This document shows, one piece after another, positions 1,139 to 32,300 of a DNA stretch of 45,644 nt; position 1 is the stretch's first letter, and each line of letters starts with the position of its first letter. A model generated the notes under the pieces. The model ran no database searches and was not told the origin of the DNA. It worked only from the letters and a program-made list of their open reading frames with translations. Both the position numbers and the translations under genes were made by a program. The DNA comes from Macrostomum lignano (lineage: Eukaryota), in NCBI GenBank assembly GCA_002269645.1, contig NIVC01004447.1:1-45644 (forward strand), written 5' to 3'.

Positions 1139-1213
1139 CTGCAGGCATTTGTATTATTATTTTTATTATGCATGCCAAAAAAGTGTACTATATTACTGCC
1201 AGTGCCACATTAC

Positions 1214-3658
1214 AAGAGGGTGTAGAAGAGGGTGGAGAGAAGGGTGTAGAGAGGGTGGAGAGGAGGGTGTAGAGAGGGTGAGAGGAGGGTGTAGGAGAGG
1301 GTGGAGAGGAGGTGTAGGAGAGGTGGAGGGAGGGTGTAGCGAGAGTGAGAGAGGTGTAGAGAGGTGGAGCGAGGGTGTAGGAGAGGGTGGAGAGGAGGGT
1401 GTGGAAGAGGGTGGAGAGGAGGGTGTAGGAGAGGGTGGAGAGGAGGGTGTAGGAGTGTAGAGAAGGTGTAGAAGAGGGTGGAGAGGAGTGTAGGAGAGGG
1501 TGGAGAGGAGGGTGTAGGAAGAGGGTGGAGAGGAGGGTGTAGGAGAGGGTGGAGAGGAGGGTGTAGGAGAGGGTGGAGAGGAGGGTGTAGGAGAGGGTGG
1601 AGAGGAGGTGTAGGAGGTGTAGAGAAGGGTGTAGAAGAGGGTGGAGAGGAGGGTGTAGGAGAGGGTGGAGAGGAGGGTGTAGGAGAGGGTGGAGAGGAGG
1701 GTGTAGGAGAGGGTGGAGAGGAGGGTGTAGAAGAGGGTGGAGAGGAGGGTGTAGGAGAGGGTGGAAAGGAGGGTGTAGGGGAGGGTGGAGACGAGTGTGT
1801 AGGATAGGGTGGAGAGGAGGGTGTAGAAGAGGGTGGAGAGGAGGGTGTAGGAAGTGTAGAGAAGGGTGTAGGAGAGTGAGGAGAGAAGGGTGTAGGAGGT
1901 GTAGAGAAGGGTGTAGGAGGGGGGGAGAGGAGGGTATAGGAGAGGGTGGAGAGGAGGGTGTAGGAGAGGGAGGAGAGAAGGGTGTAGGAGAGGGTGGAGA
2001 GGAGGGTGTAGAAGAGGGTGGAGAGGAGGGTGTAGGAGAGGGTGGAGAGGAGGGTGTAGAAGAGGGTGGAGAGGAGGGTGTAGAAGAGGGTGGAGAGGAG
2101 GGTGTAGGAGAGGGTGAAGAGGAGGGTGTAGAAGAGGGTGGAGAGGAGGGTGTAGAGAGGGTGGAGAGGGGTGTAGGAGAGGGTGGAGAGGAGGGTGTAG
2201 GAGAGGGTGGAAAGGAGGGTGTAGGGGAGGGTGGAGACGAGTGTGTAGGATAGGGTGGAGAGGAGGGTGTAGAAGAGGGTGGAGAGGAGGGTGTTAGAAG
2301 AGAGTGGTAGAGGAGGGTGGAGAGGAGGGTGTAGAAGAGGGTGGAGAGAAGGGTGTAGGAGAGGGTGGAGAGGAGGGTGTAGAAGAGGGTGGAGAGGAGG
2401 GTGTAGGAGGGTGGAGAGGAGGGTGTAGAAGAGGGTGGAGAGGAGGGTGTAGGAGAGGGTGAAGAGGAGGGTGTAGAAGAGGGTGGAGAGGAGGGTGTAG
2501 GAGAGGGTGGAGAGGAGGGTGTAGAAGAGGGTGGAGAGGAGGGTGTAGGAGAGGGTGGAAAGGAGGGTGTAGGGAGGGTGGAGACGAGTGTGTAGGATAG
2601 GGTGGAGAGGAGGCGGTGTAGAAGAGGGTGGAGAGGAGGGTGTAGAAGAGGGTGGAGAGGAGGGTGGAGAGGAGGTGTAGAAGAGGGTGGAGAGAAGGGT
2701 GTAGAGAGGGTGGAGAGGAGTGTGTAGATAGGGTGGAGAGGAGGGTGTAGAGAGGGTGGAGAGGAGGGTGTAGAAGAGGGTGGAGAGAAGGGTGTAGGAG
2801 AGGGTGGAAGAGGAGGGTGTAGGAGAGGGTGGAAGGAGGGTGTAGGGAGGGTGGAGACGAGGTGTGTAGAGAGGGTGGAGAGGAGGGGTGTAGAAGAGGG
2901 TGGAAAGGAGGGTGTAGGGGAGGGTGGAGACGAGTGTGTAGGATAGGGTGAGAGAGGTGTGTAGAAGAGGGTGGAGAGGAGGGTGTAGAAGAGGGTGGAG
3001 AGGAGGGTGGAGAGGAGGGTGTAGAAGAGGGTGGAGAGGAGGGTGTAGGAGAGGGTGGAAAGGAGGGTGTAGGGGAGGGTGGAGAGGAGGGTGTAGGGGA
3101 GGGTGGAGACGAGTTTGTAGGATAGGGTGGAGAGGAGGGTGTAGGGGAGGGTGGAGAGGAGGGTGTAGGGGAGGGTGGAGACGAGTGTGTAGAAGAGGGT
3201 GGAGAGGAGGGTGTAGGAAGTGTAGCGAAGGGTGTAGGAGAGTGAGGAGAGAAGGGTGTAGGAGGTGTAGAGAAGGGTGTAGGAGGGGGGAGAGGAGGGT
3301 ATAGGAGAGGGTGGAGAGGAGGTGTAGAGAGGGTGGAGAGAAGGGTGTAGGAGAGGGTGGAGAGGAGGGTGTAGGAGAGTGAGGAGAGAAGGGTGTAGGA
3401 GGTGTAGAGAAGGGTGTAGGAGGGGGGAGAGGAGGGTATAGGAGAGGGTGGAGAGGAGGGTGTAGGAGAGGGAGGAGAGGAGGATGTAGGAGGTGCAAAG
3501 GAGGGTGTAGGAGAGATTGTAGAGGGGGGTGTAGGAGAGGGTGAAGAGGAGGTGTAGGAGAGGGTGGAGAGGAGGTGTAGGAGAGGGTGGAGAGGAGGGT
3601 GTAGGAGAGGGTGGAGAGAAGGATGTAGAGAGAGTGTAGAGAGAGTGGGAGAGTAGGA
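1214..3658 (+). repeat. ~24-bp purine-rich minisatellite (GAGAGGGTGGAGAGGAGGGTGTAG), ~2.4 kb, intron 3
   Basis: About 100 imperfect copies with almost no C on the plus strand. It generates all the low-complexity ORFs between 1095 and 3704. Confidence 0.95.
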
Positions 3659-3947
3659 AGTTGTAATAGGGTGAATACACGAACTTAAGACTGAGACGAT
3701 GCACTGGGTGAGAATAGTATTTGATTCAGAATCAGTCTGTCACCCCAATCAACAAAATCTATATTTACGAGTATATCAGTCAATGAGGTGGTGGGTGATG
3801 TACACAGAAAAACTGCTTAGCCAAAATCTGTTGTAAACATAAGTAAGCAAAAGCATTACAGACAGAGAAAACTATTCGAGGACATTGCTAATTTGCAGTC
3901 CTTACACGGGTCAGTTTGGCATCAACTCAGATAGACGAGCAACTCAC

Positions 3948-4824: not shown

Positions 4825-5480
4825 CTGCAGCGCCTTGAAGGGATCAATTCGTGTCAACAGATGTTTTTAATCAGTTGAGTAGCTTCGCTTAAATTAAATT
4901 GAAGATATCGTCTTCGCCTACTAACAGTAGACGCAAAATTGTCATCTTACGCCATGCTACTATTATAAAACTGTAAAATATATTTATTCAAAGCCGGTTT
5001 CCATGCCAAAATAATATAGTCTCGCAAGATTGGAAGCCAGTCTCTTTCAGATCAATTTTCTTGTCCTAATAAAACTTCGAATGAAATGTTTTGTTGCAGG
5101 TTTGTCCTTAGTTTCAAGCTCAGAAGGTAAAAAGTGAATCGCTACAGTAATTCATCATCGTCCCAAAAACAGCAACGCTGAGGCAATGCTGCCCATTGCG
5201 CTGGCTCCCGAGCACACGACAAGCGCGCCAATACTGCACAGAGACACGCACTCGCACACACGCTCACACAGAGTGTACAGTGGCCCTTGACTTTCTAATC
5301 GGTCAGGCATGTCTCTGTGCCATGGGTTGGTCCTCATGAGTGTGAATTGCACGACAAATCCCTGCCAATTTTTCTTGCACAAGAACCAAATGAATTCGGC
5401 TGCGCACGGAATCGAACCAGGGGTCGTTGCGCAACAGTCAGCCGCCGCGTTTACCGCTGAACTGTTTTGCGTCCCCTCTA

Positions 5481-6580
5481 ATATCTCATACCTCATATCT
5501 CATACCTTACATCTCATATCTCATACCTCATATCTCATACCTCATATCTCATATGTCATACCTCATATCTCATACCTCATGTCTCATATCCCATATGTCA
5601 TACCTCATATCTCATATCTCATATGTCATACCTCATATCTCATACCTCATGTCTCATATCTCATATGTCATACCTCATATCTCATACCTTACATCTCATA
5701 TCTCATATCATATCTCACACCTCATTTCTCATACCTTACATCTCATATGTCATACCTCATATCTCATACCTCATATCTCATATCTCATATGTCATACCTC
5801 ATATCTCATACCTTACATCTCATATCTCATACCTCATATCTCATACCTCATATCTCATATGTCATACCTCATATCTCATACCTCATGTCTCATATCCCAT
5901 ATGTCATACCTCATATCTCATATCTCATATGTCATACCTCATATCTCATACCTCATGTCTCATATCTCATATGTCATACCTCATATCTCATACCTTACAT
6001 CTCATATGTCATACCTCATATCTCATACCTCATATCTCATACCTCATATCTCATATCTCATATGTCATACCTCATATCTCATACCTTACATCTCATTTCT
6101 CATACCTCATATCTCATACCTCATATCTCATGTCATACCTCATATCTCATACCTCATGTCTCATATCTCATATGTCATACCTCATATATCATACCTCATG
6201 TCTCATATGTCATACCTCATATCTCATACCTTACATCTCATTTCTCATACCTCATATCTCATACCTCATATCTCATGTCATACCTCATATCTCATACCTC
6301 ATGTCTCATATCTCATATGTCATACCTCATATATCATACCTCATGTCTCATATCTCATACCTCATATCTCATATCATATCTCATTCCTCATGTCATACCT
6401 CATATCTCATACCTTACATCTCATACCTTACATCTCATACCTTACATCTCATATCTCATACCTCATATCTCATACCTCATATGTCATACCTCATATCTCA
6501 TACCTCATGTCTCATATGTCATACCTCATATTTCATATCTCATATCTCATACCTTATATCTCATCTCATATCTCATATCT
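5481..6580 (+). repeat. 7-9 bp complex microsatellite (CTCATAT / CTCATAC / ATGTCATAC), intron 1
   Basis: 1.1 kb of direct tandem copies. It explains the SHISYL-type ORFs at 5309-6656. Confidence 0.95.
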
Positions 6581-10301: not shown

Positions 10302-11113
10302 CGCACTTTGAAGCGACTTTATTGAGCTGACTGAAAATTTGAACCAGACAGGCCGCAGTGAACAACATATTGCGGCATTCCGAATTTAAATATTGATCGA
10401 TATTGATTGTTATAAATGCACAGCTGATTGGCTGAATTCACGCGGATGTGCACGGGTTAGAACAAGCGTATATTGATAATATAATGAGAATATGTCAGAC
10501 CAGCATACCATTTTGTCCAACCGCAATAGCTTTGTAGTTAACAACGCAATAGACAAACGCAACTAAAGCTAAAACTACTATTACTAGTAATATATATAAG
10601 TAGAGAAGTGACCACACAGAGAAGTATATATGTATAAAAAATTGTCCATAAGCATTCACAGATAATTATTGAATAACAAAGTAAGTGAAATCTTTAAAAG
10701 AAATCGAATGGATCTGACAGAGACAGGAAAAACAGCTTTTAAAAAATCTCTTAGTTACATAAAAAATCTGATAAATAAATGTAAAGAACAAGCATACAAT
10801 AGCATCTTTCATACTTGCGCAGCTGCATACGCAAAATAACATGGCTGGGTTTTCTAACAGCTAGAAGGACGAGTTATAACTTTGTTAACCAGATCACTTA
10901 TGAAGCAGTCCCTTCTCTCCTAAATTACGAGTATTATGGTAAAAACCAGGCACATTTCAGACAGAGGGCGCTACTCATAAGAACATGATGCTTTTATTTT
11001 TCTGAACTGCATTGTTAAAACAATATTTTTGTTTTAAATGCTGCTATAAAACTTTTAAGTTTTTTCTGCAACAGTCTGCAAAATCTTTAATTGAAAATTG
11101 AAGCAGGGGCGGT

Positions 11114-14100
11114 GGCGGTCAAATGTTCCTGACAGGCAAATGTCACTGACAGTCAAATGTCTCTGACAGTCAAATGTCTCTGACAGGCAAATGTCTCTGA
11201 CAGTCAAATGTCACTGACAGTCAAATGTCTCTGGCGGTCAAATGTCACTGACAGTCAAATGTCACTGACAGTCAAATGTTCCTGACAGGCAAATGTCTCT
11301 GACAGTCAAATGTCACTGACAGTCAAATGTCACTGACAGTCAAATGTTCCTGACAGTCAAATGTCTCTGACAGTCAAATGTCACTGACAGTCAAATGTCT
11401 CTGGCGGTCAAATGTCACTGACAGTCAAATGTCACTGACAGTCAAATGTTCCTGACAGGCAAATGTCTCTGACAGTCAAATGTTCCTGACAGGCAAATGT
11501 CTCTGACAGTCAAATGTCACTGACAGTCAAATGTCCCTGACAGTCAAATGTCCCTGACAGTCAAATGTCTCTGACAGTCAAATGTCACTGACAGTCAAAT
11601 GTCTCTGACAGTCAAATGTCACTGACAGTCAAATGTCACTGACAGTCAAATGTCACTGACAGTCAAATGTCTCTGACAGTCAAATGTCACTGACAGTCAA
11701 ATGTCCCTGACAGTCAAATGTCTCTGACAGTCAAATGTCACTGACAGTCAAATGTCACTGACAGTCAAATGTCCCTGACAGTCAAATGTCCCTGACAGTC
11801 AAATGTCTCTGACAGTCAAATGTCCCTGACAGTCAAATGTCTCTGACAGTCAAATGTCACTGACAGTCAAATGTCACTGACAGTCAAATGTCCCTGACAG
11901 TCAAATGTCACTGACAGTCAAATGTCACTGACAGTCAAATGTCTCTGACAGTCAAATGTCACTGACAGTCAAATGTCCCTGACAGTCAAATGTCTCTGAC
12001 AGTCAAATGTCACTGACAGTCAAATGTCCCTGACAGTCAAATGTCCCTGACAGTCAAATGTCCCTGACAGTCAAATGTCCCTGACAGTCAAATGTCTCTG
12101 ACAGTCAAATGTCACTGACAGTCAAATGTCACTGACAGTCAAATGTCCCTGACAGTCAAATGTCCCTGACAGTCAAATGTCTCTGACAGTCAAATGTCCC
12201 TGACAGTCAAATGTCTCTGACAGTCAAATGTCACTGACAGTCAAATGTCACTGACAGTCAAATGTTCCTGACAGGCAAATGTCTCTGACAGTCAAATGTC
12301 ACTGACAGTCAAATGTCCCTGACAGTCAAATGTCTCTGACAGTCAAATGTCACTGACAGTCAAATGTCACTGACAGTCAAATGTCCCTGACAGTCAAATG
12401 TCCCTGACAGTCAAATGTCTCTGACAGTCAAATGTCCCTGACAGTCAAATGTCTCTGACAGTCAAATGTCACTGACAGGCAAATGTCCCTGACAGTCAAA
12501 TGTTCCTGACAGGCAAATGTCTCTGACAGTCAAATGTCTCTGACAGTCAAATGTCACTGACAGTCAAATGTCCCTGACAGTCAAATGTCCCTGACAGTCA
12601 AATGTCTCTGACAGTCAAATGTCACTGACAGTCAAATGTCTCTGACAGTCAAATGTCACTGACAGTCAAATGTCACTGACAGTCAAATGTCACTGACAGT
12701 CAAATGTCTCTGACAGTCAAATGTCACTGACAGTCAAATGTCCCTGACAGTCAAATGTCTCTGACAGTCAAATGTCACTGACAGTCAAATGTCACTGACA
12801 GTCAAATGTCCCTGACAGTCAAATGTTCCTGACAGTCAAATGTCTCTGACAGTCAAATGTCCCTGACAGTCAAATGTCTCTGACAGTCAAATGTCACTGA
12901 CAGTCAAATGTCACTGACAGTCAAATGTCCCTGACAGTCAAATGTCCCTGACAGTCAAATGTCACTGACAGTCAAATGTCACTGACAGTCAAATGTCTCT
13001 GACAGTCAAATGTCACTGACAGTCAAATGTCCCTGACAGTCAAATGTCTCTGACAGTCAAATGTCACTGACAGTCAAATGTCACTGACAGTCAAATGTCC
13101 CTGACAGTCAAATGTCCCTGACAGTCAAATGTCCCTGACAGTCAAATGTCCCTGACAGTCAAATGTCTCTGACAGTCAAATGTCACTGACAGTCAAATGT
13201 CACTGACAGTCAAATGTCCCTGACAGTCAAATGTCCCTGACAGTCAAATGTCTCTGACAGTCAAATGTCCCTGACAGTCAAATGTCTCTGACAGTCAAAT
13301 GTCACTGACAGTCAAATGTCCCTGACAGTCAAATGTTCCTGACAGGCAAATGTCTCTGACAGTCAAATGTCACTGACAGTCAAATGTCCCTGACAGTCAA
13401 ATGTCTCTGACAGTCAAATGTCACTGACAGTCAAATGTCACTGACAGTCAAATGTCCCTGACAGTCAAATGTCCCTGACAGTCAAATGTCTCTGACAGTC
13501 AAATGTCCCTGACAGTCAAATGTCTCTGACAGTCAAATGTCACTGACAGTCAAATGTCCCTGACAGTCAAATGTCCCTGACAGTCAAATGTCTCTGACAG
13601 TCAAATGTCACTGACAGTCAAATGTCACTGACAGTCAAATGTCACTGACAGGCAAATGTCTCTGACAGTCAAATGTTCCTGACAGGCAAATGTCTCTGAC
13701 AGTCAAATGTTCCTGACAGGCAAATGTCTCTGACAGTCAAATGTCTCTGACAGTCAAATGTCACTGACAGTCAAATGTCCCTGACAGTCAAATGTCCCTG
13801 ACAGTCAAATGTCTCTGACAGTCAAATGTCACTGACAGTCAAATGTCTCTGACAGTCAAATGTCACTGACAGTCAAATGTCACTGACAGTCAAAGTCACT
13901 GACAGTCAAATGTCTCTGACAGTCAAATGTCACTGACAGTCAAATGTCCCTGACAGTCAAATGTCACTGACAGTCAAATGTCCCTGACAGTCAAATGTCT
14001 CTGACAGTCAAATGTCACTGACAGTCAAATGTCACTGACAGTCAAATGTCCCTGACAGTCAAATGTCCCTGACAGTCAAATGTCTCTGACAGTCAAATGT

Positions 14101-15118
14101 CCCTGACAGTCAAATGTCTCTGACAGTCAAATGTCTCTGACAGTCAAATGTCACTGACAGTCAAATGTCCCTGACAGTCAAATGTCCCTGACAGTCAAAT
14201 GTCTCTGACAGTCAAATGTCCCTGACAGTCAAATGTCTCTGACAGTCAAATGTCACTGACAGTCAAATGTCCCTGACCGTCAAATGTTCCTGACAGGCAA
14301 ATGTCTCTGACAGTCAAATGTCACTGACAGTCAAATGTCACTGACAGTCAAATGTCTCTGACAGTCAAATGTCACTGACAGTCAAATGTCCCTGACAGTC
14401 AAATGTCCCTGACAGTCAAATGTCCCTGACAGTCAAATGTCTCTGACAGTCAAATGTCCCTGACAGTCAAATGTCTCTGACAGTCAAATGTCACTGACAG
14501 TCAAATGTCCCTGACAGTCAAATGTTCCTGACAGGCAAATGTCTCTGACAGTCAAATGTCACTGACAGTCAAATGTCCCTGACAGTCAAATGTCCCTGAC
14601 AGTCAAATGTCACTGACAGTCAAATGTCCCTGACAGTCAAATGTCCCTGACAGTCAAATGTCACTGACAGTCAAATGTCCCTGACAGTCAAATGTCACTG
14701 ACAGTCAAATGTCCCTGACAGTCAAATGTCCCTGACAGTCAAATGTCCCTGACAGTCAAATGTCACTGACAGTCAAATGTCACTGAAAGTCAAATGTCAC
14801 TGAAAGTCAAATGTCACTGAAAGTCAAATGTCACTGAAAGTCAAATGTCACTGACAGTCAAATGTCACTGAAAGTCAAATGTCACTGAAAGTCAAATGTC
14901 ACTGAAAGTCAAATGTCACTGAAAGTCAAATGTCACTGAAAGTCAAATGTTACTGAAATTCGAATGTCACTGGAAGTCAAATGTCACTGAAAGTCAAATG
15001 TTACTGAAATTCGAATGTCACTGGAAGTCAAATGTCACGGACAGTCAAGATGTCACTGACAAAGTCATCGACAGTGAAATTTTACTGGAAGTCAATTGTC
15101 ACTGACAGTTAAATGTCC
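11114..15118 (+). repeat. 17-bp satellite TGACAGTCAAATGTC[A/T/C]C, ~235 copies, 4 kb
   Basis: Strict 17-bp period. It degenerates through TGAAAGTC... variants from ~14780 to the right end. Confidence 0.97.
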
Positions 15119-15319: not shown

Positions 15320-16178
15320 TCAAACGTCAATCCTTCGCCCGAGCCCGTCGTTGCTGGCTTCTCCAGTCTCAACACCGGCTGCCGGGTCAGCGACCGGCGG
15401 CTCTCTCCGCCTGTAGCAGCGATGACAGGCAAAAGCAACCAACAGTCCCAGCGTGGACCCCGCCAGCACGTCCTCTGGATGATGATGGAAGTCAACCAGC
15501 CGGCTCAGTGCGATGCCGGAGGCTGCAAGGCAGGGCGCCAGGCAGGCCAGCAGGCGCACAGATGGCGCCAGACGAGCCGAAGATTTAAACAGTTGAAGCC
15601 AGTCAGCAAGCAGGAAGGACAGATAGGCCAGGCTGGCGAATGACATGGAAGCGTGGCCGGACGGGAACGATTTCCGGCCCTCAGCCACAGTGTCCGGATC
15701 GCCAGTGCAAGCGCTCGGCACTAGAAGCAGAAGCTGCTGCAGTTGCTGAGGCCCAGGTTCGCCATCGTCCGGTACTGCGCCAGACTCAGCGGCGGCAGGC
15801 ACGAGTCTGGCCTCGCCCGATGGGAAGCAGCGATAGAAGAAGTCTGGTCTCGGCCGGCCAACTATCAGCTTCACCGCGTCAGTGATGAGGCCGGTGAGCA
15901 GGAGGGAGAGCGAGTAGCCTAGCAACATCATCTGACAGGCTGTTGCTCTTCTAGAAGAGCAACCGGAGCTGCTCGAGCCTTCCGAGTCCAGCAGCTGTGG
16001 CTGTTTCTGCAGCTGCTGCCGTTGCTGTAGCAACAGCATCATTAGGGTTGGCACGGCAACTGTCACCATGACAACAACCAACCAGGATGGGAAGTAGGGC
16101 GCGGTGGGTTTGTTGCGATAGAGCCACAGCTCCTCGGGATGGATGTCGCGATCTCGGGGCGCCACGTGCTGAAGGAGG
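15320..16178 (-). CDS. PLPP4/PLPP5: PAP2-family phospholipid phosphatase (PLPP4/5, DPP1-like), exon 2
   Basis: All three PAP2 motifs are intact: KLIVGRPRP, PSGH, SRLVDFHHHPED. Also IHPEELWLYRN and GRKSFPSG as in PLPP4/5. Acceptor cgcag|C at 16178 matches the phase-2 donor of exon 1. Confidence 0.93.
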
Positions 16179-16306
16179 CTGCGCGGGGATGCAGGGGAAA
16201 ATCGAGTGAGGTAATTTGCCATTGGATTGCGAATGGGAATATAATAATTCTTAATTCGAATTTCATTTCTACAGAATCTTCCTATAAATTCTGCGCTCTA
16301 CCAGAG

Positions 16307-16937
16307 TCTATCCCCAGATTATGTAGCACTCTACCCCCAGATTATGTAGCTGTCAACCCCCAGATTATGTAGCTGTCTACCCCCAGATTATGTAGCACTC
16401 TACCCCCAGATTATGTAGCACTCTACCCCCAGATTATGTAGCATTCTACCCCCAGATTATGTAGCACTCTACCCCCAAATTATGTAGCACTCTACCCCCA
16501 GATTATGTAGCTGTCTACCCCCAGATTATGTAGCTGTCTACCCCCAGATTATGTAGCTGTCTACCCCCAGACTATGTACCTGTCTACTCCCAGATTATGT
16601 AGCTGTCTACCCCCAGATTATGTAGCTGTCTACCCCCAGATTATGTAGCTGTCTACCCCCAGATTATGTAGCTGTCTACCCCCAGATTATGTAGCTGTCT
16701 ACCCCCAGATTATGTAGCTGTCTACCCCCAGATTATGTAGCTGTCTACCCCCAGATTATGTAGCTGTCTACCCCCAGATTATGTAGCACTCTACCCCCAG
16801 ATTATGTAGCACTCTACCCCCAGATTATGTAGCTGTCTACCCCCAGATTATGTAGCTGTCTACCCCCAGATTATGTAGCACTCTACCCCCAGATTATGTA
16901 GCATTCTACCCCCAGATTATGTAGCATTCTACCCCCC
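16307..16937 (+). repeat. 23-bp minisatellite (CTACCCCCAGATTATGTAGCTGT / ...GCACT) in the PLPP intron
   Basis: About 27 tandem copies with two alternating variants. Confidence 0.95.
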
Positions 16938-17049
16938 ACCCAATCTGTAGTTCTACCCCCCGCCATCTGTAGCTGTCTACTTGCACATTTGGTGGCATTC
17001 TACCCCTAAGCTGTGTAGCATTCTCAACCTGATTTCATAGACGACTCAC

Positions 17050-17129
17050 GCAAACACAACAGCCATAGCGATGCGAATGACCACCTCCAGCAGAAGACTG
17101 GATGGCACACTGCTAATTAGCTTCATCAT
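17050..17129 (-). CDS. PLPP4/PLPP5: PLPP4/5-like phosphatase, exon 1
   Basis: MMKLISSVPSSLLLEVVIRIAMAVVF + GC|GTGAGT; EVVIRIAMAVVF parallels EIGVRALLFGVF of PLPP4. The phase fits exon 2, giving a ~312-aa protein. This exon is not in the ORF track. Confidence 0.85.
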
Positions 17130-17825
17130 TAGTGTCGTTCTGGAGTCACCGCCGAAGCTTTGCATAGCAACTAAAAGTGAGGCATGATTTCGGTCTGAAA
17201 AGTTTAAATTATTACTGAGATATTACTTAATTAGCATAACACTTGACAAATTTCAACAGCAAATCTACAGTTCTAGATAACAATCTTCAGATTTCAACAG
17301 CGAATCTACAGTTATAAATGACAATCTACAGACTTTTAACAGCAATTCCATAGCTGACAATTCCATAGATGACAACCTAAAGATTTCAAACACGAATCTA
17401 TCGATCTAGGTATTCGTAAACCTCCTACTATACTACTATAAGTAGGATGGTAATATAAATTTACCATCCTACTTACAGCATATAATAACTGAAATACATT
17501 GAGCTAAAGTTTTAAAACTGCTGACACACAAATAAATAGAACAGATAATAGCCAAAATGATGTCAGTTTATATTTGACAGTCGAACAATGGGAGCCTCCT
17601 ATTAAAGCTGCAATTCTTATCTAATATATTTCTAAGCTAGAAAATTTTAGCCTAAATATTACCCTACGGAGAGACACGGGAGGAGGAAGTTGAGCCTCAT
17701 AACTGAATATTCCGAAGCAAAATTAACAAAAGCATATCTAACAGTCTAGGTGGGGTAAGTTCACACAGGCATTGGTACACTTTTCAGTAGATAGTTAGAT
17801 AATATATATATATGACACCCGTGCT

Positions 17826-18179
17826 TTAGAGCGGCCATTTCCATTGGTTGGGCGGCGCCTGGCCAATCAGCGGTTCCCATGGTTTCCAGGCGAGAAAATT
17901 TCTAGCCAATTGCAGTTCCCGCTCGGCCTGCTGTACAACTTCTTCAATCTGGCCGCAGTTAATCCGCTTCTCTAGGCGGCTGATGTCGGGCTCCGAGTTC
18001 ACGGCGGCCAGGCGCTCCTTCACGATGGCCTCGGTAGACTGACGGTACTTGGCATCGGCCGGCATGCGAGCCAGCAGCTTGAGGGTGCGATCGTACAGAG
18101 CGGTCAGGGAGATATGCGGCGTGGAGTTCACAGCTAGGCCAGTAAGGCCTGTGGTGAGTTTGCCTGCAGCTTTTGATGC
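17826..18179 (-). CDS. NDUFA5: NADH:ubiquinone oxidoreductase subunit A5 (B13); initiator codon not in this exon
   Basis: TTGLTGLAV, CGQIEEVVQQAEREL.LAR and WKPWEPL...PPNQWKWP are the NDUFA5 signature. The exon begins after ttgcag| with GCA, and an in-frame TGA lies just upstream with no ATG. Confidence 0.95.
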   Translation of the reverse strand, partial: ASKAAGKLTTGLTGLAVNSTPHISLTALYDRTLKLLARMPADAKYRQSTEAIVKERLAAVNSEPDISRLEKRINCGQIEEVVQQAERELQLARNFLAWKPWEPLIGQAPPNQWKWPL

Positions 18180-19282
18180 CTGCAATAGATCATTATTATT
18201 TCATGAGCTTGCTTGATTATTGGTTGTTGTAGCGGTTAAAATTTGCAACAATTAGGCAATAAATGCATCAGCATAGTCCCAATAGTAGGGACTTATAGTA
18301 GAGAACAAATACAAATTTTAACAAACATTAAAGTTATCAAATTTTATTCTGATCATATTGCTACTACCTAATTTAATGATATGCATATGCATAGACTTAA
18401 GATTTATTTTACTTCATAATATAATACCCTAACCAGAAGGAATCAACTAAGGTAAAGATGCATTAGACATTATTCATTTTTGCCAAGGAATGATTTTGCT
18501 AGAAAATAAATGGTGAATATATAATTTTTTCTACCTTGTTTCTAATCATTCCTCAGTATATGAATAATTGTATAAAATAACTTCTAATTTTCAAAACTGT
18601 TTCTATTTTGTTTGTTATCCTATTCATTGTAACAATCAGCTTTGAAGTGTTTCACACTGAAAGTGAAAAAAATATGGCTTTTATATTGCTTATAGATGAA
18701 ATCATTTAAACTGTTATAAAACAAAGGGCTTTGTAGGAAATACAAGTATATAACTGTTTAACCTTCAAATGAAATTTTAGTGTTTAATGGCTCCACAATA
18801 ATTTTTTTTTATTTCTTGTGAAGATTTTTTATTATCATGGCCCAACCTTTTGATAGTATTTTTTTTTGTTTCATTTTGTATCTCAAATATTTATTAAAAA
18901 CATTTTTTTCTTAGCAAATAAAGAAAGAAACAAAAAGATATAATTTTTATGCAGGACATTTTACATTTAAACTTTTTTTTCTATAGGATCACAAAAAATG
19001 TCTTAAGACAATCAAAACTAATTTACACCAAATCACATAACTCAACTTTAAAAAAATAAAAGTAACTTATTTTATAGGGGTCTAGCATTCATCTTATATT
19101 CTAAAATATTTGCATTTTTAAAACCCAATATAGTTTTAACTTTTAATGCAAAATGCAATATAAAATTTTAATAGGCATAGAATGATATAGCAAAATGCAA
19201 TATAAAATTTTAATAGGCATAGAATGATATAGCTTGAAAGATTTCAAGATTGGCACAAAGTTAGATAGATAGACTTAGTTAA

Positions 19283-20556
19283 CAGTAGGAATACCAAGCC
19301 ATTTTTCCGCCCGTCGAACTACCAAGGGGGGGGGGAAATTCCCCCCCTCCTGACAATTTTTTTTGCTGCACTGGAACGGAGCAACAGACACACGAAATTC
19401 AAGAACACGGGCTAACTTTTTGTTGCGCACCTTCTCAAACAAGAATCAAGTCGCCAGCCCTCCGGACCGTCGAGATATTCGACGATTCTGCCAGAAGGTC
19501 GGATTTTTCCCATAAGCGCTAGTGTATTCAGTACACCCCTGTGCGCCAATTAGCACTGCGCCTCAGTGCAGCCTTGCCAAGTCTCCAAAGTCTCCAAGTC
19601 GGGATGATTACGGTATGCTTGAGAGACTAGCTGAGAATGTCTGACGGTTGATTCTTGCCCACTGTCGAGGCTTGATCGGCGAAACTAGAGAAATCAGCAT
19701 CAGGGTGTCCATAGTCACCTGGTGTAATCTGTTGAAGGTGCCGACGGCATCGGGGTGATGACGGAATGCTCGAGAAACTAGCTGACAATGTCCATCGGTT
19801 GAGGTTTGCCCATTATTGAAGCTTGATAAGAAAAATCTAACATATTTGCAACAGGATGTCCGTAGTCACCTGGTGCCACCTGTTGAAGGTGCCGACGGCG
19901 TCAAGGTGGTGACGGAAGGCTCGAGAGACTAGCTGAGGGTTTTCAGAAGTTGAGGCTTGCCCACTGTCGAGGCTTGATCGGCGAAACTAGAGAAATCAGC
20001 ATCAGGGTGTCCATAGTCACCTGGTGTAATCTGTTGAAGGTGCCGACGGCGTCGGGATGATGACGGAATGCTTGAGAGACTAGCTGAGAATTTTTGACGG
20101 TTGATTCTTGCCCACTGTCGAGGCTTGATCGGCGAAACTAGAGAAATCCGCATCAGGGTGTCCATAGTCACCTGGTGCCACAGCTGTTGAGGGTCCAGAA
20201 GCTCCACCTGGGTGAAGGCTAGTGACAAACGAAGTCAGAACTGATGCAGACACATGTGGTCGACGTGCTGATGTAATTTGGAGACTTGGCAAGGCTGCAC
20301 TGAGGCGCAGTGCTGATTGGCGCACAGGGGTGTACTGAATACACTAGCGCTTATGGGAAAAATCCGACCTTCTGGCAGAATCGTCGAATATCTCGACGGT
20401 CCGGAGGGCTGGCGACTTGATTCTTGTTTGAGAAGGTGCGCAACAAAAAGTTAGCCCGTGTTCTTGAATTTCGTGTGTCTGTGTTGCTCCGTTCCAGTGC
20501 AGCAAAAAAAATTGTCAGGGGGGGGGAATTTTCCCCCCCCCTTGGTAGTTCTACTG
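19283..20556. mobile_element. Non-autonomous DNA transposon with ~280-bp near-perfect TIRs, TTAA flanks and an internal ~151-bp tandem repeat
   Basis: TTAA|CAGTAG ... CTACTG|TTAA. 19311-19589 is the reverse complement of 20277-20551 with very few mismatches. Internal units start at 19621, 19772, 19923 and 20074. Confidence 0.9.
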
Positions 20557-20902
20557 TTAATGTAAGGCAGATGCAATAGGCTCATAACTCAAAGTCTCAA
20601 ACAGTCATATAATTTAATTGTCTTAGTATAGGCCTACTACTACACCTCTTCATGTTCAATTTTGATCAAATTCAAGTTCTAAAAAACTATAGTATTTGTC
20701 ATGCTATCTCAGCCTAGAGACATCCAAACTCAGCCAGCCCATCTCGACAGTGCGATTTTTTACGTAAGTCAGTCAAGTTTTACCATAGACATGCTTCTTA
20801 AGGCCATGCTATCTCAGCCTGGGACATGCAATCTCAGCCACTTTTCAGATTCTATGTCAAGCTGTCTGTGGCTTAGTCTGTGATCGAAGCAAATGAAACA
20901 GA

Positions 20903-21961
20903 ATGAGAGCAACAAGCGACGAAGACAGAAGACGACTGATTGCTGCGTGGACGGAAGGTCAGGACCTACGTGTGGCCGCCAAAGTTCTTCGCATGAATCT
21001 GAAGACAGCTCGACATATCGTCAGGATTTATGAAGCAACGGGCCGGGTGGATGCCCTCCCGCGAGGGGAAGAAAGATTGGCTCATGCAAGTTCGATGAGG
21101 AGATGCGCCAGGCGCTTATTGCTTTCGTGGATGCGAACCCCCTGGCGACGCTGAAAGCATTGCGCACGAAGCTGAGTGCCCAGCTTCCCAACAAGCCGCC
21201 TGTCACCATCAAGACACTGGCCAGAGCCTTGGAAGGGGCTTTGTACACGTTCAAGATCGCCACCAAGAACACTGACATCCGACTGAGCGCAAACTCGCAG
21301 GGGGTGATCGAGAAGAGACGCGAGTACGCGCTGCTCATGACCGAACTGCAACAGGACACGGTGGTCGTCTACATCGACGAAACGGGTTACAACCTGTGGA
21401 CTCGCAGATCGCAAGGGTGGTCACGACGGGGTCAGCCAGTGAGGCGCCGATGCCCGACCCAGAGGGGTCCAAATCTCTCGATCTGCCTGGCCGTGTCTTC
21501 CGCTTTGGGGCTGGTGAAGAGCGAGTTTTTCAGGGGAGGCCAGACGAAGGAGAGATTTCAGCACTTCGTCAACGACCTTGTTGAACAAGTTGTCCCGCAG
21601 ATCGGCAATGCCAGAGTCGTCATTGTCTACCTTTCACCGTGGTGTGGCAGTGCCGGAGCAGCATCGCCACCAGTTTGAGCTTCATCTGTTGCCCGCCTAC
21701 TCACCTTTTCTAAACCCCTGCGAAATGGCCCACAGCGCAGTGAAGGCCTCGATCAAGCTGCAGCTAGCTGACCCTGCACTGGTGGAGGAGGAGGCTGGTG
21801 GCCGACCCGATGGGGTCACCTGCGAAGCTTGGCGCCTCATTCTCTTGGAGCGAGTGGGCCGAGTCGCGCTAGATGCTGTGACGCCGCTAAAGGTGGCCAG
21901 ATGGGAGATTCACTGCAATCGGAACTTCCCGCAGTGTATCGCAGAGCAGCCTTTCAACTAG
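20903..21961 (+). pseudogene. DDE transposase (IS630/Tc1), two frameshifts
   Basis: N-terminal HTH, YIDETG, RRSQGWSRRG and LPAYSPFLNPCE. One frameshift is in a G run at ~21065; the second (~21630) is a small deletion removing the DNAP motif with the second catalytic Asp. Confidence 0.88.
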
Positions 21962-22261
21962 GCTGAGCACTGAGCGTCTTACTGACTTTGTCCGTTGTTG
22001 CGTACCCTTACTGACTTTTCTTGCTGCGTTCATTCATTGCTGTTTGTTGCCATTTCATGTCACGTTACAGAAATGATAGCATTGAGATCTGTTTGCAATT
22101 GAAATCTATATTGGCTGAGATTGCATGTCCCAGGCTGAGATAGCATGGCCTTAAGAAGCATGTCTATGGTAAAACTCGACTAGCTCGAGCCAAAAAATCA
22201 CACTGTCGAGATGGGCTGGCTGAGTTTGGATGTCCCTAGGCTGAGATAGCATGACAAAAGC

Positions 22262-22433
22262 CATACATGCGCAACTTTGGGAATCACCCGGCCGTTTCTA
22301 TTGGCAACACACGCATGTAAGTCGCTATTGGCTGAGAGCAGTCACGTGACTACTATTCCGTCCAATAGCGACTTACATGTGTGTGTTGCCAATAGAAACG
22401 GCCGAGTGAATCCCAAGGTTGCGCCCAAGCATG
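22262..22433. mobile_element. hAT-type MITE, copy 1 (172 bp, long internal palindrome)
   Basis: 8-bp TSD ACAAAAGC at 22254-22261 and 22434-22441; arms of about 60 bp are reverse complements. Confidence 0.85.
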
Positions 22434-22885
22434 ACAAAAGCTATAGTAGAACTTCAATTTAGACTAGGGCACCACTTGCAGGCAAATCAATAAAAACAAA
22501 TGCCAATTCAATATATAGAGCCATTTCAATTCAAACATAGGCTTTTTGTTTATGGCTAAACCTTTGTAAGGCAAGTATGTGCTACACCATTTTACCACCT
22601 ATTTTTGACCAAACTCCCTTTCAATTCAAACAATTGAAACTGCAATTCAGACACTATCTATGAAACACAGTGCTTACAGAGATTCAATTAAGACAGACAC
22701 TCTTTTTATATTCAACAGAGCCCTTTTTATTCAGTCAGCCAAAATTGTCTATGGTTAAAAATGCAAGTTTATACCCAACTCAGTCAGATAGAATAAAACC
22801 AAAAGAGACAGACATTTCAAATCAAACACAATAGCTGAGGCTTGGAGTTAAGATATAGAAAAAGTGCAAAACAAGCTATTTAAAG

Positions 22886-29370: not shown

Positions 29371-32300
29371 GACTTCAATGCTCATATAAACAATACCTCA
29401 TACATAGATTTAAATTCAATATATACCACCAGAGCAAAAAACATCTCACTTACTAGACAAAGCCAAGACAAGAAAACCTGCAAAAATGGTAGACTACTTA
29501 ACCAGATTACTGACTCATACAACCTGCATCTAATCAATGGTAGATCATTATCAGACACAAATGGTGAATTCACCTTTCTCTCAAAATCTGGTTCCTCTGT
29601 TATAGATCTCTGTTTCGTCTCTACCAGCTTACTCCAACACCTCGAAGACTTTAAAGTAAAGAACCACACCTACTTTAGCGACCACAACCAAATAGTGCTC
29701 TCCCTATCAAGTGAATTCACAGAGGAAATCACAGAAACTAAACAAGCAACCAATAACTCGAAAACGAGATATAGAGTCCTAAAAAAGTCACATAAACCCA
29801 ACCTGCAACAAGAAAAACATATCAATAACTTCGCAAATGACCTGAAAAACATGAATGACAAAATCACAAATCTAGACATACAAAACCCAGCTTTTATAAA
29901 TGAATTAAGTAGAAAAGTTAGACAAATTCAAAACAACATCACAGTAGAGATAAAGAACCCACTATGCTCAACACTGCCTCGCTTCCTTAAAGATTTAAGA
30001 AACGCTGCTAGACATGCCTGCAGAAGATATAAAACCTTCCCTACTCCCAACAACCTCTCAAGCAAAGTACAACTCAAAAAAGCATACGAAAAAAAGCTCA
30101 CTTCATGGAAATTTGAAACAACTCTCTGTGCAGACAACATGATCAACCAAGCCTTTATTCAAAACGATACAAAACAACTTTGGAACTTATTAAAAACACC
30201 AAATCCCTCAAACAACAGAGTAACAATTGATGAAAAATTTATCATACACTTTCAAAATCTTGTAACTGAACAAGACAGCAGCATTAGACTATCATACAAT
30301 CTTCACCTTGACAACCCTATTCTGGCTGATTTAGAGGATTTCAATGCCCCATTCACCAAAGAAGAAGTTATAAAACATATTAAAAAGCTCAAAACCGACA
30401 AAGCACCTGGGCACGATAAAGTATATGTAGAAACACTCAAATACCTCGAGAACGAACTTGCTGACCTCCTATGCTCACTTTTCAACGAAGCACTCAAACA
30501 AGGAACCTTCCCAACTAGTTGGATAACAAATACACTTCATCCGATTTATAAAAACAAAGGCAGCAGTGCCGACCCCAACAATTACAGAGGAATCTGCATT
30601 CAACCAATTCTTGGCAAGCTCTTTTGCCAAATTATTAAATCCAGACTCGAAAACCTAGCATACGCAAACAATCTTATATCAAAATACCAATACGGTTTCA
30701 AGCCCAATCACAGCACAATCGACCAATGTTTTAATCTTTACAACATTATAAACCAATCCATCTACAACAAAGAAGAACTCTTTATTGGATTTGTTGACTA
30801 TGAAAAAGCCTTCGATAGCTTAAATAAACCAACCCTTTGGCACAAAACGGATAACCAGGGTATTAAAGGTCAAATGACGGAACTTATCAAGAACATGCAT
30901 AAAAATGCCTGCTTCATTCTAAAAAATGATGATGATGATGATGAAACCCAGCCAATCCCAATATCTAAAGGTGTTCTTCAAGGCAACCCTCTCTCTACCA
31001 TCCTTTTTGAACTATATATTGACGACATTGTTGAATATCTTGAACTCTCTAGCGCTAGGCGCTCTCTTACGAGATCTGCTTTCCCACTCATCCTACTCTT
31101 TGCAGACGATCAAGCCATTCTAGCTAAAAACAAAGACGAACTTCAAGACACATTTACGACTATGGAAAATTACTGCAAACAAAATTACTTGAAAGTAAAC
31201 GCAAGCAAAACAAAGTTCATGCAGGGCAATACCAGACAAAAAAACGACACAGAAAGCATTGCTACAAAAATATACTACGACAACCAAGAAATAGAGGAAG
31301 TAAATGAATTTAAATACCTGGGAATTATTTTTGAACCAAAAAACAGCTTTAAAAAATGTATTGAACACCAAACTAAGCAGGGATATACAGCCATGTTTTC
31401 CCTACTCCATAGGGTAAAGAATACGTCCCTAGACATCACACTCATTCGCAGACTATTTGACGCGCTTGTTACCCCCGTTATCACTTACAATTGTGAGCTC
31501 TGGGGCCCTCTGGCTACCATGTCTGATACAAAAGCTATTGATAATATTCAGCTGAAATTCTACAAATATCTCCTCAATCTACCAAAATTTGCTAGCAACA
31601 GTGTGGTATCATCAGAACTTGAGCTTACTCCAATCTCTCAACGAATCGCTAAAACCTACCTCATCTACTGGCTGAAGATTAGACACAAAAAACTCTGCCA
31701 AACGACTCTAGAAATTTTCTACTCAAACACAGGCCAAAAAAATCCATGGAAAATGAATGTACTAAAGAAACTAGAAAGTATAGACCTAAAAGCACTAACT
31801 GAAGATAAACTTTCCCAAAGCTTTAATAACGAGAAATACCTAGTGAAAAAGCACCTCAAGATACACAGAGAAAGAGAACTTAGCCAAAAGCTAGAGAATC
31901 AGCAACATATTAAACTCTACAAAAACGCCTATCTCTACAAAAAAATCTGCAGGCCCGACCTTTCAGATTTCTTTCCATGTACATTTAGAAACAAAAAATT
32001 CTTAACAACCCTCCTAAAACTGAAATGCGAGATTACACCCAACTTTTTTTCTCAAGAACCATGTAAAATGTGTGGAGCGCGAAATGGTTCTGACATTCTA
32101 CACTACTTGACCGAATGTCCACAAACTGAAGAGATCAGGAAAAAATACTTCTGTCAATACCTCTTAAATAGCAATCAAATACACAAGATAGGATATGCTA
32201 CAAATGAAAAAAGAGTCAGAAAAGAGCTCACTGGTGTAGCTAAAATATATGAAGTCATGAATAGCTAAAACAGTTAAACAAACTGAATCAGATACATCAG

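What the first reader, a model, noticed from the sequence alone, without database searches (positions are those of the whole stretch)
17826..18200. NDUFA5 has no start codon of its own: candidate for initiation on a spliced-leader AUG
Seen: the coding exon starts in phase 0 directly after a 3' splice site (ctattgcag|GCA TCA AAA), exactly where the N-terminus is expected. The upstream frame is closed by TGA with no ATG, and I found no ATG|GT micro-exon in the 1.1 kb up to the next transposon. Established: flatworm spliced leaders end in a conserved AUG that can serve as initiator. Inference: SL-AUG + GCA gives M-ASKAAGKLTTGL, so an essential complex I gene would depend on trans-splicing for translation.
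Basis: partly seen in the sequence, partly recalled or inferred. Interest (0 to 1): 0.72.

Follow-up and report, generated by a model that had tools for sequence, protein, structure and literature searches.

The report
NDUFA5 gene borrowing spliced-leader start codon
A flatworm (Macrostomum lignano) mitochondrial complex I gene has every codon except its ATG, and it almost certainly gets that ATG from the spliced leader RNA added to its mRNA, a mechanism already documented in flatworms.

Summary
The window is contig NIVC01004447.1 of the Macrostomum lignano Mlig_3_7 assembly. On the minus strand, one 354-nt exon (18179..17826) encodes a full-length NDUFA5/B13 protein lacking only Met1. It starts in phase 0 right after TTGCAG|. 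An in-frame TGA lies 8 codons upstream and there is no ATG between.

- The published 35-nt M. lignano spliced leader (SL) ends in ATG, and its acceptor motif [T/C]TNCAG matches this site.
- All three genomic copies are annotated as 5'-partial CDSs starting 0-3 nt after the acceptor. The annotation pipeline set 5' ends from SL-containing reads.
- No ATG-bearing upstream exon is shared between the paralogs.
- GC jumps from about 0.3 to about 0.6 at the acceptor.
- The next in-frame AUG (Met39) would delete nine invariant residues.

I could not reach RNA reads, so SL addition at 18179 is inferred, not shown. The mechanism is known from Schistosoma and Echinococcus (Cheng et al. 2006), where other respiratory-chain subunits also have an in-frame SL AUG. 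Two trematode NDUFA5 genes keep a genomic ATG. This is a new member of a known kind and of modest interest. Its main practical point is that the 'partial' GenBank proteins are probably complete.

The parts
17826..18179 (-). Single coding exon of NDUFA5 (complex I subunit B13): codons 2-118 plus the TAA stop. It has no ATG of its own at the N-terminus.
   Evidence: Translation. PF04716 at E=5e-26. 67-68% identity to mollusc orthologs. The ortholog alignment shows that only Met1 is missing. Against paralog L002 there are 5 synonymous and 2 non-synonymous differences, with 98% identity in the CDS and 90% upstream.
18180..18185 (-). Predicted SL trans-splice acceptor TTGCAG|. The exon starts in phase 0 immediately after the AG.
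   Evidence: Sequence. It matches the published M. lignano SL-acceptor motif [T/C]TNCAG (PMC8629364). It is identical in all three gene copies. The annotated 5'-partial CDS starts 0-3 nt after it.
18201..18203 (-). In-frame TGA that closes the reading frame 8 codons upstream of the exon.
   Evidence: In-frame translation ...SS*NNNDLLQ|ASK.
18186..18806 (-). AT-rich upstream region (GC 0.23-0.34) shared with the diverged paralog L002 at about 90% identity. This is the presumed outron, with or without the promoter. It holds no conserved ATG exon.
   Evidence: Alignment of the three copies. Colinear blastn homology starts 627 nt upstream of the acceptor. GC profile and exon scan.
18063..18065 (-). 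The first genome-encoded in-frame ATG (Met39 of the exon), which is the only alternative AUG start. Using it would delete residues 1-38, including nine invariant positions.
   Evidence: ATG positions in the predicted SL+exon mRNA are 33, then 150. Invariant columns T10, G14, L15, V17, P21, L25, L28, Y29 and L33.
15320..17200 (-). Downstream same-strand PAP2 (lipid phosphate phosphatase) gene. It starts at a TTTCAG| acceptor (17200-17195), 631 nt after the NDUFA5 stop, so the two genes look like an operon-like trans-spliced pair.
   Evidence: Called genes. PF01569 at 1.9e-28 on the last exon. In L001 and L002 the annotated 5'-partial CDS starts 2 nt after the acceptor position. The published operon distance criterion is under 1 kb (PMC8629364).
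19313..22265 (.). Two DNA-transposon-like insertions upstream of the gene. One is a foldback element (19313-20554). The other is a Tc1/mariner-like element (20688-22265) with a DDE_3 ORF. Both lie inside a roughly 3.9-kb stretch (18806-22745) that is absent from paralog L002.
   Evidence: Inverted repeats. DDE_3 at 9.3e-10. blastn colinearity.

Best explanation
The window is a Macrostomum lignano contig. NDUFA5 is transcribed with an AT-rich outron of at least about 0.6 kb. The spliceosome joins the 35-nt SL mini-exon, whose last three bases are AUG, to the TTGCAG| acceptor at 18180/18179. The mature mRNA would then begin CGGUCUCUUACUGCGAAGACUCAAUUUAUUGCAUG|GCAUCAAAAGCU...

The SL AUG is the first AUG on that mRNA, lies directly in frame, and is followed by 117 sense codons. 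Scanning ribosomes would start there and make the 118-aa protein MASKAAGKLTTGL...WKWPL. The genome supplies every codon except the initiator.

Shown here: the sequence anatomy, the species, the family, the frame, the lack of an alternative start, and the three concordant gene copies. Taken from the literature: the SL sequence, the acceptor motif, the use of SL reads to set transcript 5' ends, and the ability of a flatworm SL AUG to initiate translation. Inferred: that SL is added at this site, and that translation depends on it. From general knowledge of mammalian B13 and of Met-Ala N-termini, the Met is probably removed, which would leave a mature protein that is entirely exon-encoded.
For: Species and copies: (GCA_002269645.1; PAA89498.1 'partial').

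Family and completeness. Only Met1 is missing. Orthologs are 115-118 aa and the predicted protein is 118 aa.

Closed upstream frame.

SL sequence ending in ATG, GTAAG donor and acceptor motif [T/C]TNCAG: PMC8629364. The SL is also given in PMC5173321. PMC10468722 states that the terminal ATG is likely a translation start.

Annotation logic: PMC5730564 describes cutting at SL-read peaks followed by TransDecoder. The CDS starts at the first base after the AG in L001 and 3 nt later in the other two copies. The neighbouring PAP2 CDS also starts 2 nt after an acceptor, so in this annotation 5'-partial CDSs mark acceptor-defined transcript ends.

No alternative exon: none with a GT[AG]AG donor within 1.3 kb. 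Within 10 kb there are 1-4 chance candidates per copy, and none is shared between paralogs.

GC step from 0.24-0.34 to 0.57-0.66 exactly at the acceptor.

Purifying selection: the CDS is 98% identical with 5 synonymous and 2 non-synonymous changes, against 90% identity upstream.

Predicted mRNA: the first AUG is the SL AUG at nt 33 and the next is at nt 150.

Precedent: more than 40 S. mansoni cDNAs need the SL AUG (PMC9851317 citing Cheng 2006). In E. granulosus, a complex I subunit and COX6B have the SL AUG in frame (PMC3510090).
Against: I saw no RNA read, cDNA or peptide for this gene. Exact look-ups of M+protein and of SL-extended variants found nothing in the protein collection. A metagenome scan for the start of the exon also found nothing.

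I saw only CDS ranges and the word 'partial', not the mRNA feature or the SL-read track. Two of the three copies are annotated from TCA rather than GCA, and I cannot explain that 3-nt offset.

RNA-seq reads were multi-mapped in the annotation pipeline, so it is unknown which of the three copies is expressed.

The context of the SL AUG has U at -3, which is not optimal, although +4 is G.

About 35% of M. lignano donors lack GT[AG]AG. A weak-donor exon such as ATGATTAGAAACAAG|GTAGAA, 370 nt upstream, is therefore not excluded by sequence alone. Its ATG is absent from paralog L002.
Confidence: 0.85

Rival explanations
1. A conventional cis-spliced 5' exon carrying the ATG exists further upstream, possibly beyond the transposon insertions. 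On this view TTGCAG| is an ordinary intron acceptor and the annotation simply missed exon 1.
For: Other animals have a tiny first exon. Two trematode NDUFA5 genes start with a genomic 6-codon exon, ATGCAAGC(T/C)...|GT. About 35% of M. lignano donors are non-consensus. Weak candidates exist, for example ATG + 4 codons | GTAGAA 370 nt upstream.
Against: No ATG...|GT[AG]AG phase-0 exon lies within 1.3 kb in any copy. Candidates within 10 kb are not shared between paralogs. The weak candidate's ATG is missing in L002. Homology between the paralogs stops 627 nt upstream, and the remaining matching blocks are only 75-78% identical and repeat-like. The RNA-seq-guided annotation gives a 5'-partial CDS starting at the acceptor in all three copies. 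That requires the transcript model to start there.
Confidence: 0.07
2. Translation starts at the first genome-encoded in-frame AUG (Met39, 18065-18063), giving a 79-aa N-terminally truncated protein. The upstream codons would then be 5' UTR.
For: It is the only genomic in-frame ATG. The SL AUG has a suboptimal -3 base, so some leaky scanning is conceivable.
Against: It would remove 38 residues that include nine invariant columns and the first 25 positions of the Pfam domain. Those 38 codons are identical between the paralogs, while the upstream non-coding DNA is 90% identical. GC content and an open frame run right up to the acceptor.
Confidence: 0.03
3. The locus is a 5'-truncated, intronless retrocopy or pseudogene, or an annotation or assembly artefact, and does not make NDUFA5.
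For: The gene is intronless, whereas the trematode orthologs have introns. It lacks an ATG and sits among repeats and transposons.
Against: Three independent contigs carry the same intact ORF behind the same acceptor. The substitution pattern fits purifying selection, with 5 synonymous and 2 non-synonymous changes. The gene models come from a transcript-based annotation. No other M. lignano NDUFA5 appears among the 120 listed hits. The truncation point coincides exactly with codon 2 and a consensus SL acceptor.
Confidence: 0.03
4. Non-AUG initiation on unspliced RNA, for example at the in-frame TTG at 18185-18183, giving MQASK...
For: the ORF listing reports a 119-aa 'TTG' ORF. Non-canonical starts do exist in eukaryotes (PMC9851317).
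Against: The TTG is part of the acceptor motif, which splicing would remove. The call reflects only the bacterial start table. The unspliced outron contains many out-of-frame ATGs upstream.
Confidence: 0.01

Closest known systems
Flatworm mRNAs that use the SL 3'-terminal AUG as initiator Met (Cheng, Cohen, Ndegwa & Davis 2006, J Biol Chem 281:733; Schistosoma, and extended to Echinococcus in PMC3510090)
   Same: The SL ends in AUG. The acceptor sits directly at codon 2. The SL AUG is in frame and is needed for an N-terminus that matches conserved orthologs. In E. granulosus, respiratory-chain subunits (a complex I subunit and COX6B) are among the transcripts with an in-frame SL AUG.
   Different: This is a free-living macrostomorph, not a neodermatan parasite. 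NDUFA5 is not a listed example. The E. granulosus NDUFA5 ESTs came from the cap-selected library rather than the SL library, and two trematode NDUFA5 genes keep a genomic ATG. No experimental proof exists for this gene.
[quoted passage not shown] 2017, PMC5730564; Ustyantsev & Berezikov 2021, PMC8629364)
   Same: It fits the [T/C]TNCAG acceptor motif. It is a conserved housekeeping gene, which is the class enriched among trans-spliced genes. A same-strand gene 631 nt downstream also starts at an acceptor, which is within the 1-kb operon criterion.
   Different: Those papers do not discuss the SL AUG as a start codon or this gene. The word AUG appears only once in PMC8629364, in the context of removing upstream AUGs.
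slORFs: ORFs created by SL addition in nematodes, ascidians and trypanosomes (PMC9851317)
   Same: The start codon is supplied in trans by the leader.
   Different: Those slORFs mostly start at near-cognate NUG codons inside the SL. Here a canonical AUG at the SL terminus restores a conserved, canonical protein.
NDUFA5 / B13 orthologs of other animals
   Same: Full-length colinear alignment with 51-65% identity to the ten orthologs aligned and 67-68% to the closest molluscs by BLASTP, 28 invariant columns, the same length and a Met-Ala-type N-terminus.
   Different: The orthologs encode their own ATG. The trematode ones do so in a separate 6-codon first exon. The M. lignano gene is a single exon with no ATG.

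Membership tests
NDUFA5 / complex I B13 subunit (Pfam PF04716) | Significant match to the ETC_C1_NDUFA5 profile above the gathering score | tested here: met
   E=5e-26, 90.7 bits against a cut-off of 27, covering profile positions 1-67 of 67.
NDUFA5 / complex I B13 subunit (Pfam PF04716) | Full-length colinearity with orthologs, including the C-terminal NQWKWP motif | tested here: met
   The best named hits are all NDUFA5 at 52-68% identity and 92-100% coverage. The alignment has 28 invariant columns.
SL trans-spliced gene of Macrostomum lignano | The organism has an SL RNA whose mini-exon is added to mRNAs | tested here: met
   Species identified as M. lignano. SL and SL RNA gene are described in PMC8629364. 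No SL RNA gene lies in this window, as expected.
SL trans-spliced gene of Macrostomum lignano | A 3' acceptor of the [T/C]TNCAG type with no cis donor upstream | tested here: met
   TTGCAG| at 18185-18180. No consensus phase-0 donor lies upstream, and none is shared between paralogs.
SL trans-spliced gene of Macrostomum lignano | SL-containing reads or cDNAs joined at the acceptor | not testable with these tools
   No reads are available. The only support is indirect: 5'-partial CDSs start 0-3 nt after the AG, in an annotation whose 5' ends were set from SL-read peaks.
SL-AUG-initiated ORF (in the sense of Cheng et al. 2006) | The SL terminal AUG is in frame with the main ORF with no intervening stop | tested here: met
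   SL + exon gives ATG|GCA TCA..., an ORF of 118 codons.
SL-AUG-initiated ORF (in the sense of Cheng et al. 2006) | No other AUG can give the conserved N-terminus | tested here: met
   The next AUG is codon 40 of the predicted protein, and the upstream genomic frame is closed by TGA.
SL-AUG-initiated ORF (in the sense of Cheng et al. 2006) | Experimental evidence that translation starts at the SL AUG | not testable with these tools
   This needs ribosome profiling, an ATG-less reporter or N-terminal proteomics.
M. lignano operon (Ustyantsev & Berezikov criterion) | Adjacent same-strand genes less than 1 kb apart (repeat-adjusted), with the downstream gene SL trans-spliced | tested here: inconclusive
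   It is 631 nt from the NDUFA5 stop to the PAP2 acceptor, and the PAP2 CDS starts at an acceptor in L001 and L002. The NDUFA5 poly(A) site and the SL reads were not seen.

The most novel reading that the evidence does not exclude
NDUFA5 in the Macrostomum lineage has irreversibly lost its own start codon, while neodermatan flatworms kept theirs. Translation of an essential complex I subunit would then be strictly gated by SL trans-splicing. Any untrans-spliced transcript would be untranslatable, which would make trans-splicing efficiency a possible control point for respiratory-chain assembly. It would also be a clean natural example of a 'ratchet' dependency on trans-splicing.
Probability: 0.15. 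Interest if true: 0.45.

Novelty: new member of a known kind. Interest (0 to 1): 0.25.

Why it matters
The mechanism has been in the literature since 2006, so this is not a discovery of principle. It matters in three smaller ways.

1. It explains why GenBank lists the M. lignano NDUFA5 proteins (for example PAA89498.1) as 'partial'. They are very probably complete once the SL AUG is restored. The same artefact should affect other M. lignano genes whose ORF is in frame with the SL AUG and has no other start, because the published SL that reads were trimmed against includes the ATG.

2. It shows that the SL AUG is likely used in a free-living, early-branching flatworm for an essential OXPHOS subunit. 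Two trematode orthologs keep a genomic ATG, so there is a datable loss of a start codon.

3. M. lignano can be made transgenic, so this gene offers a simple in vivo assay for SL-AUG initiation.

Tried and rejected
- I looked for the SL RNA gene or SL sequence in the window and found no match at up to 3 mismatches. This is expected, because the SL genes lie elsewhere.
- I made exact look-ups of the predicted M+protein, the variant extended through the SL frame (VSYCEDSIYCM...) and the TTG-start variant. None is in the 15-billion-protein collection, so no transcript-derived copy is available.
- I scanned metagenome contigs for the first 32 nt of the exon, hoping for a cDNA-like contig, and got 0 hits.
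- I searched papers and supplements for the gene id or for NDUFA5 together with a trans-splicing flag and found nothing gene-specific.
- Cheng et al. 2006 and Wasik et al. 2015 are not held in the library, so I cite them only through papers that quote them.
- I considered a second in-exon acceptor, CTGCAG| 16 nt downstream. SL addition there would put the AUG out of frame, with a stop after 10 codons (worked out by hand from the sequence). The annotation does not support that site.
- I considered that the far-upstream blocks shared with L002 might hide an exon. They are 75-78% identical, and the one fully identical 30-mer looks like part of a palindromic repeat.
- The 'TTG start' from the ORF listing and the 838-aa 'ORF' at 1188-3704 were rejected as artefacts. 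The first comes from the bacterial start table and the second from a 12/48-bp tandem array.

Full report
**What is in the sequence**

On the minus strand, 18179..17826 is one uninterrupted reading frame, ASKAAGKLTTGLTGLAVNSTPH...APPNQWKWPL, ending in TAA. It matches Pfam PF04716 (ETC_C1_NDUFA5) at E=5e-26 over the whole profile. Its best database relatives are animal NDUFA5/B13 proteins at up to 67-68% identity and 92-100% coverage.

The exon is preceded by gatctaTTGCAG|. Upstream in frame there are seven sense codons and then a TGA (18203-18201), with no ATG. The nearby ATGs at 18204 and 18193 are out of frame. In an alignment with ten orthologs the exon reaches the position of their second residue, so exactly one codon, the initiator, is missing. 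GC content steps from 0.24-0.34 in the 600 nt upstream to 0.57-0.66 in the exon, exactly at the AG.

**Whose genome it is**

The window's own protein clusters with PAA89498.1, 'hypothetical protein BOX15_Mlig027756g1, partial [Macrostomum lignano]'. The window is the whole contig NIVC01004447.1 of GCA_002269645.1 (Mlig_3_7).

The assembly holds two more copies of the gene. NIVC01004220.1 (L001) is almost identical. NIVC01000150.1 (L002) is a diverged paralog. All three have the same architecture: the same acceptor, a single exon, and a PAP2 gene about 0.6 kb downstream on the same strand.

**The spliced leader**

The published 35-nt M. lignano SL is CGGTCTCTTACTGCGAAGACTCAATTTATTGCATG. In the SL RNA gene it is followed by a GTAAG donor. 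The most enriched motif at SL acceptors is [T/C]TNCAG, positioned right at the junction (PMC8629364). The SL is also given in PMC5173321. TTGCAG| fits that motif. A later Macrostomum genome paper says the terminal ATG is likely a translation start codon (PMC10468722).

Joining the SL to the exon in silico gives an mRNA whose first AUG, at nt 33-35, is the SL AUG. It is in frame, and the ORF reads MASKAAGKLTTGL...WKWPL, 118 codons. The next AUG is at nt 150, which is Met39 of the exon.

**Indirect RNA evidence from the annotation**

The Mlig_3_7 gene models were built from RNA-seq. Reads carrying the SL were trimmed and mapped, their peaks were used by the TBONE pipeline to cut transcripts at trans-splice sites, and ORFs were then called with TransDecoder (PMC5730564). 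TransDecoder calls an ORF 5'-partial only when it is open to the first base of the transcript (general knowledge of the program).

In L001 the CDS starts at GCA, the first base after the AG. In the window and in L002 it starts one codon later, at TCA. The neighbouring PAP2 gene behaves the same way. In L001 and L002 its 5'-partial CDS starts 2 nt after the position of a TTTTCAG| acceptor. So in this annotation 5'-partial CDSs mark transcript models that begin at acceptors, which is the signature of SL addition. I could not see the mRNA features or the SL-read track, so this remains inference. Reads were also multi-mapped, so it is unknown which copy is expressed.

**Is there a hidden first exon?**

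I scanned every ATG upstream, followed its frame to the first stop, and recorded GT dinucleotides at codon boundaries.
- Within 1.3 kb, none of the three copies has a candidate with the M. lignano donor consensus GT[AG]AG, and there is no ATG|GT micro-exon.
- Over 10 kb the window and L001 have one consensus candidate, 3.85 kb upstream and inside an insertion that L002 lacks. L002 has four, none shared.
- The best weak candidate is ATG + 4 codons | GTAGAA, 370 nt upstream. It loses its ATG in L002.

Colinear homology between the window and L002 starts 627 nt upstream of the acceptor at about 90% identity. Further upstream there are only repeat-like blocks at 75-78% identity. No gene is called within 10 kb upstream in any copy. 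A cis exon is therefore unlikely, although the roughly 35% of non-consensus donors in this species mean that sequence alone cannot exclude one.

**Is the gene alive?**

Between the window and L002, the CDS has 7 differences in 354 nt, of which 5 are synonymous and 2 are not. The 600 nt upstream have 59 mismatches plus 28 gapped positions. The first 38 codons, which would be 5' UTR if Met39 were the start, are identical between the paralogs and contain nine invariant ortholog positions. No other M. lignano NDUFA5 appears among the 120 listed hits. This argues against both a pseudogene and an internal start.

**Mechanism**

The best-supported reading is that SL trans-splicing at 18180/18179 supplies both the 5' end and the initiator AUG, and that scanning ribosomes start on that AUG. 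From general knowledge of mammalian B13 and of Met-Ala N-termini, the Met is probably removed afterwards, so the mature protein would be wholly exon-encoded. This last step is inference. I put 0.85 on the explanation as a whole.

**Comparison with what is known**

This is the phenomenon described by Cheng et al. (2006). All reported SLs of parasitic flatworms end in AUG (PMC12582326). In S. mansoni the SL AUG is in frame in 28% of trans-spliced transcripts, and more than 40 cDNAs need it (PMC9851317). In E. granulosus, 143 of 187 SL clusters are full length when the SL ATG is used. The transcripts with an in-frame SL AUG include a putative NADH-ubiquinone oxidoreductase subunit and COX6B (PMC3510090).

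NDUFA5 itself is not among the listed cases. The E. granulosus NDUFA5 ESTs came from the cap-selected library. The Fasciolopsis buski and Dicrocoelium dendriticum genes begin with a genomic ATG in a 6-codon first exon, ATGCAAGC...|GT. The M. lignano gene is thus a new member of a known kind, and it points to a lineage-specific loss of the cis start codon.

**Verdict**

Interest is modest at 0.25. The most useful consequence concerns annotation: the 'partial' M. lignano NDUFA5 entries are probably complete proteins missing only the SL-encoded Met.

Noticed in passing
window 17200-17161 (minus strand); L001 and L002 around 10968-10995: The downstream PAP2 gene also starts at an acceptor (TTTCAG|ACC, exon from 17194). 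There the SL AUG would be out of frame. It would open an 8-codon uORF (MTEIMPHF*) ending 5 nt before PAP2's own ATG (17165-17163), so PAP2 translation would need leaky scanning or reinitiation. NDUFA5 and PAP2 look like a two-gene trans-spliced unit.
   Followed up: partly
L001 around 10982-10989, compared with L002 and the window: In the near-identical copy L001 the PAP2 acceptor reads TTTTCTG instead of TTTTCAG, so that copy may have lost its trans-splice site. It is nevertheless annotated with the same CDS start, probably because of multi-mapped reads.
   Followed up: no
window 19313-20554: A foldback or MITE-like element with terminal inverted repeats of about 270 nt, including a 206-nt stretch that is 100% complementary. 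A 151-bp tandem repeat lies between the arms. It has G10/C10-type termini.
   Followed up: partly
window 20688-22265: A Tc1/mariner-like DNA transposon remnant with terminal inverted repeats of about 150 nt and a DDE_3 transposase fragment (ORF 21103-21678, E=9.3e-10). Together with the foldback element it lies in a roughly 3.9-kb stretch (18806-22745) that is absent from paralog L002.
   Followed up: partly
window 29695-32268 (+): An 857-aa ORF with a reverse transcriptase domain (RVT_1, E=6.6e-31), which points to a retrotransposon.
   Followed up: no
window 11118-15117, 16306-16936, 1216-3643, 5477-6580: Very large tandem arrays. A 17-bp unit x 236 copies (4 kb, 93% matches) lies just 3' of PAP2. 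A 23-bp unit x 27 lies inside the PAP2 intron. A 12/48-bp GA-rich array x 207 creates a spurious 838-aa ORF and a GC skew of 0.87. There is also a 14/21/35-bp array.
   Followed up: no
L004 3001-3120 (Fasciolopsis buski); L005 3001-3120 (Dicrocoelium dendriticum): The trematode NDUFA5 genes keep a genomic ATG in a 6-codon first exon followed by an intron. That intron position is not the position of the M. lignano acceptor, so the M. lignano single-exon, ATG-less structure is derived.
   Followed up: partly
window 18174-18179, compared with L001 10001: The annotated CDS starts at TCA (116 aa) in the window and L002 but at GCA (117 aa) in L001, although the sequence is identical. This is an unexplained 3-nt inconsistency in the public annotation. 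It may reflect ambiguity between the SL-terminal G and the first G of the exon during trimming.
   Followed up: no
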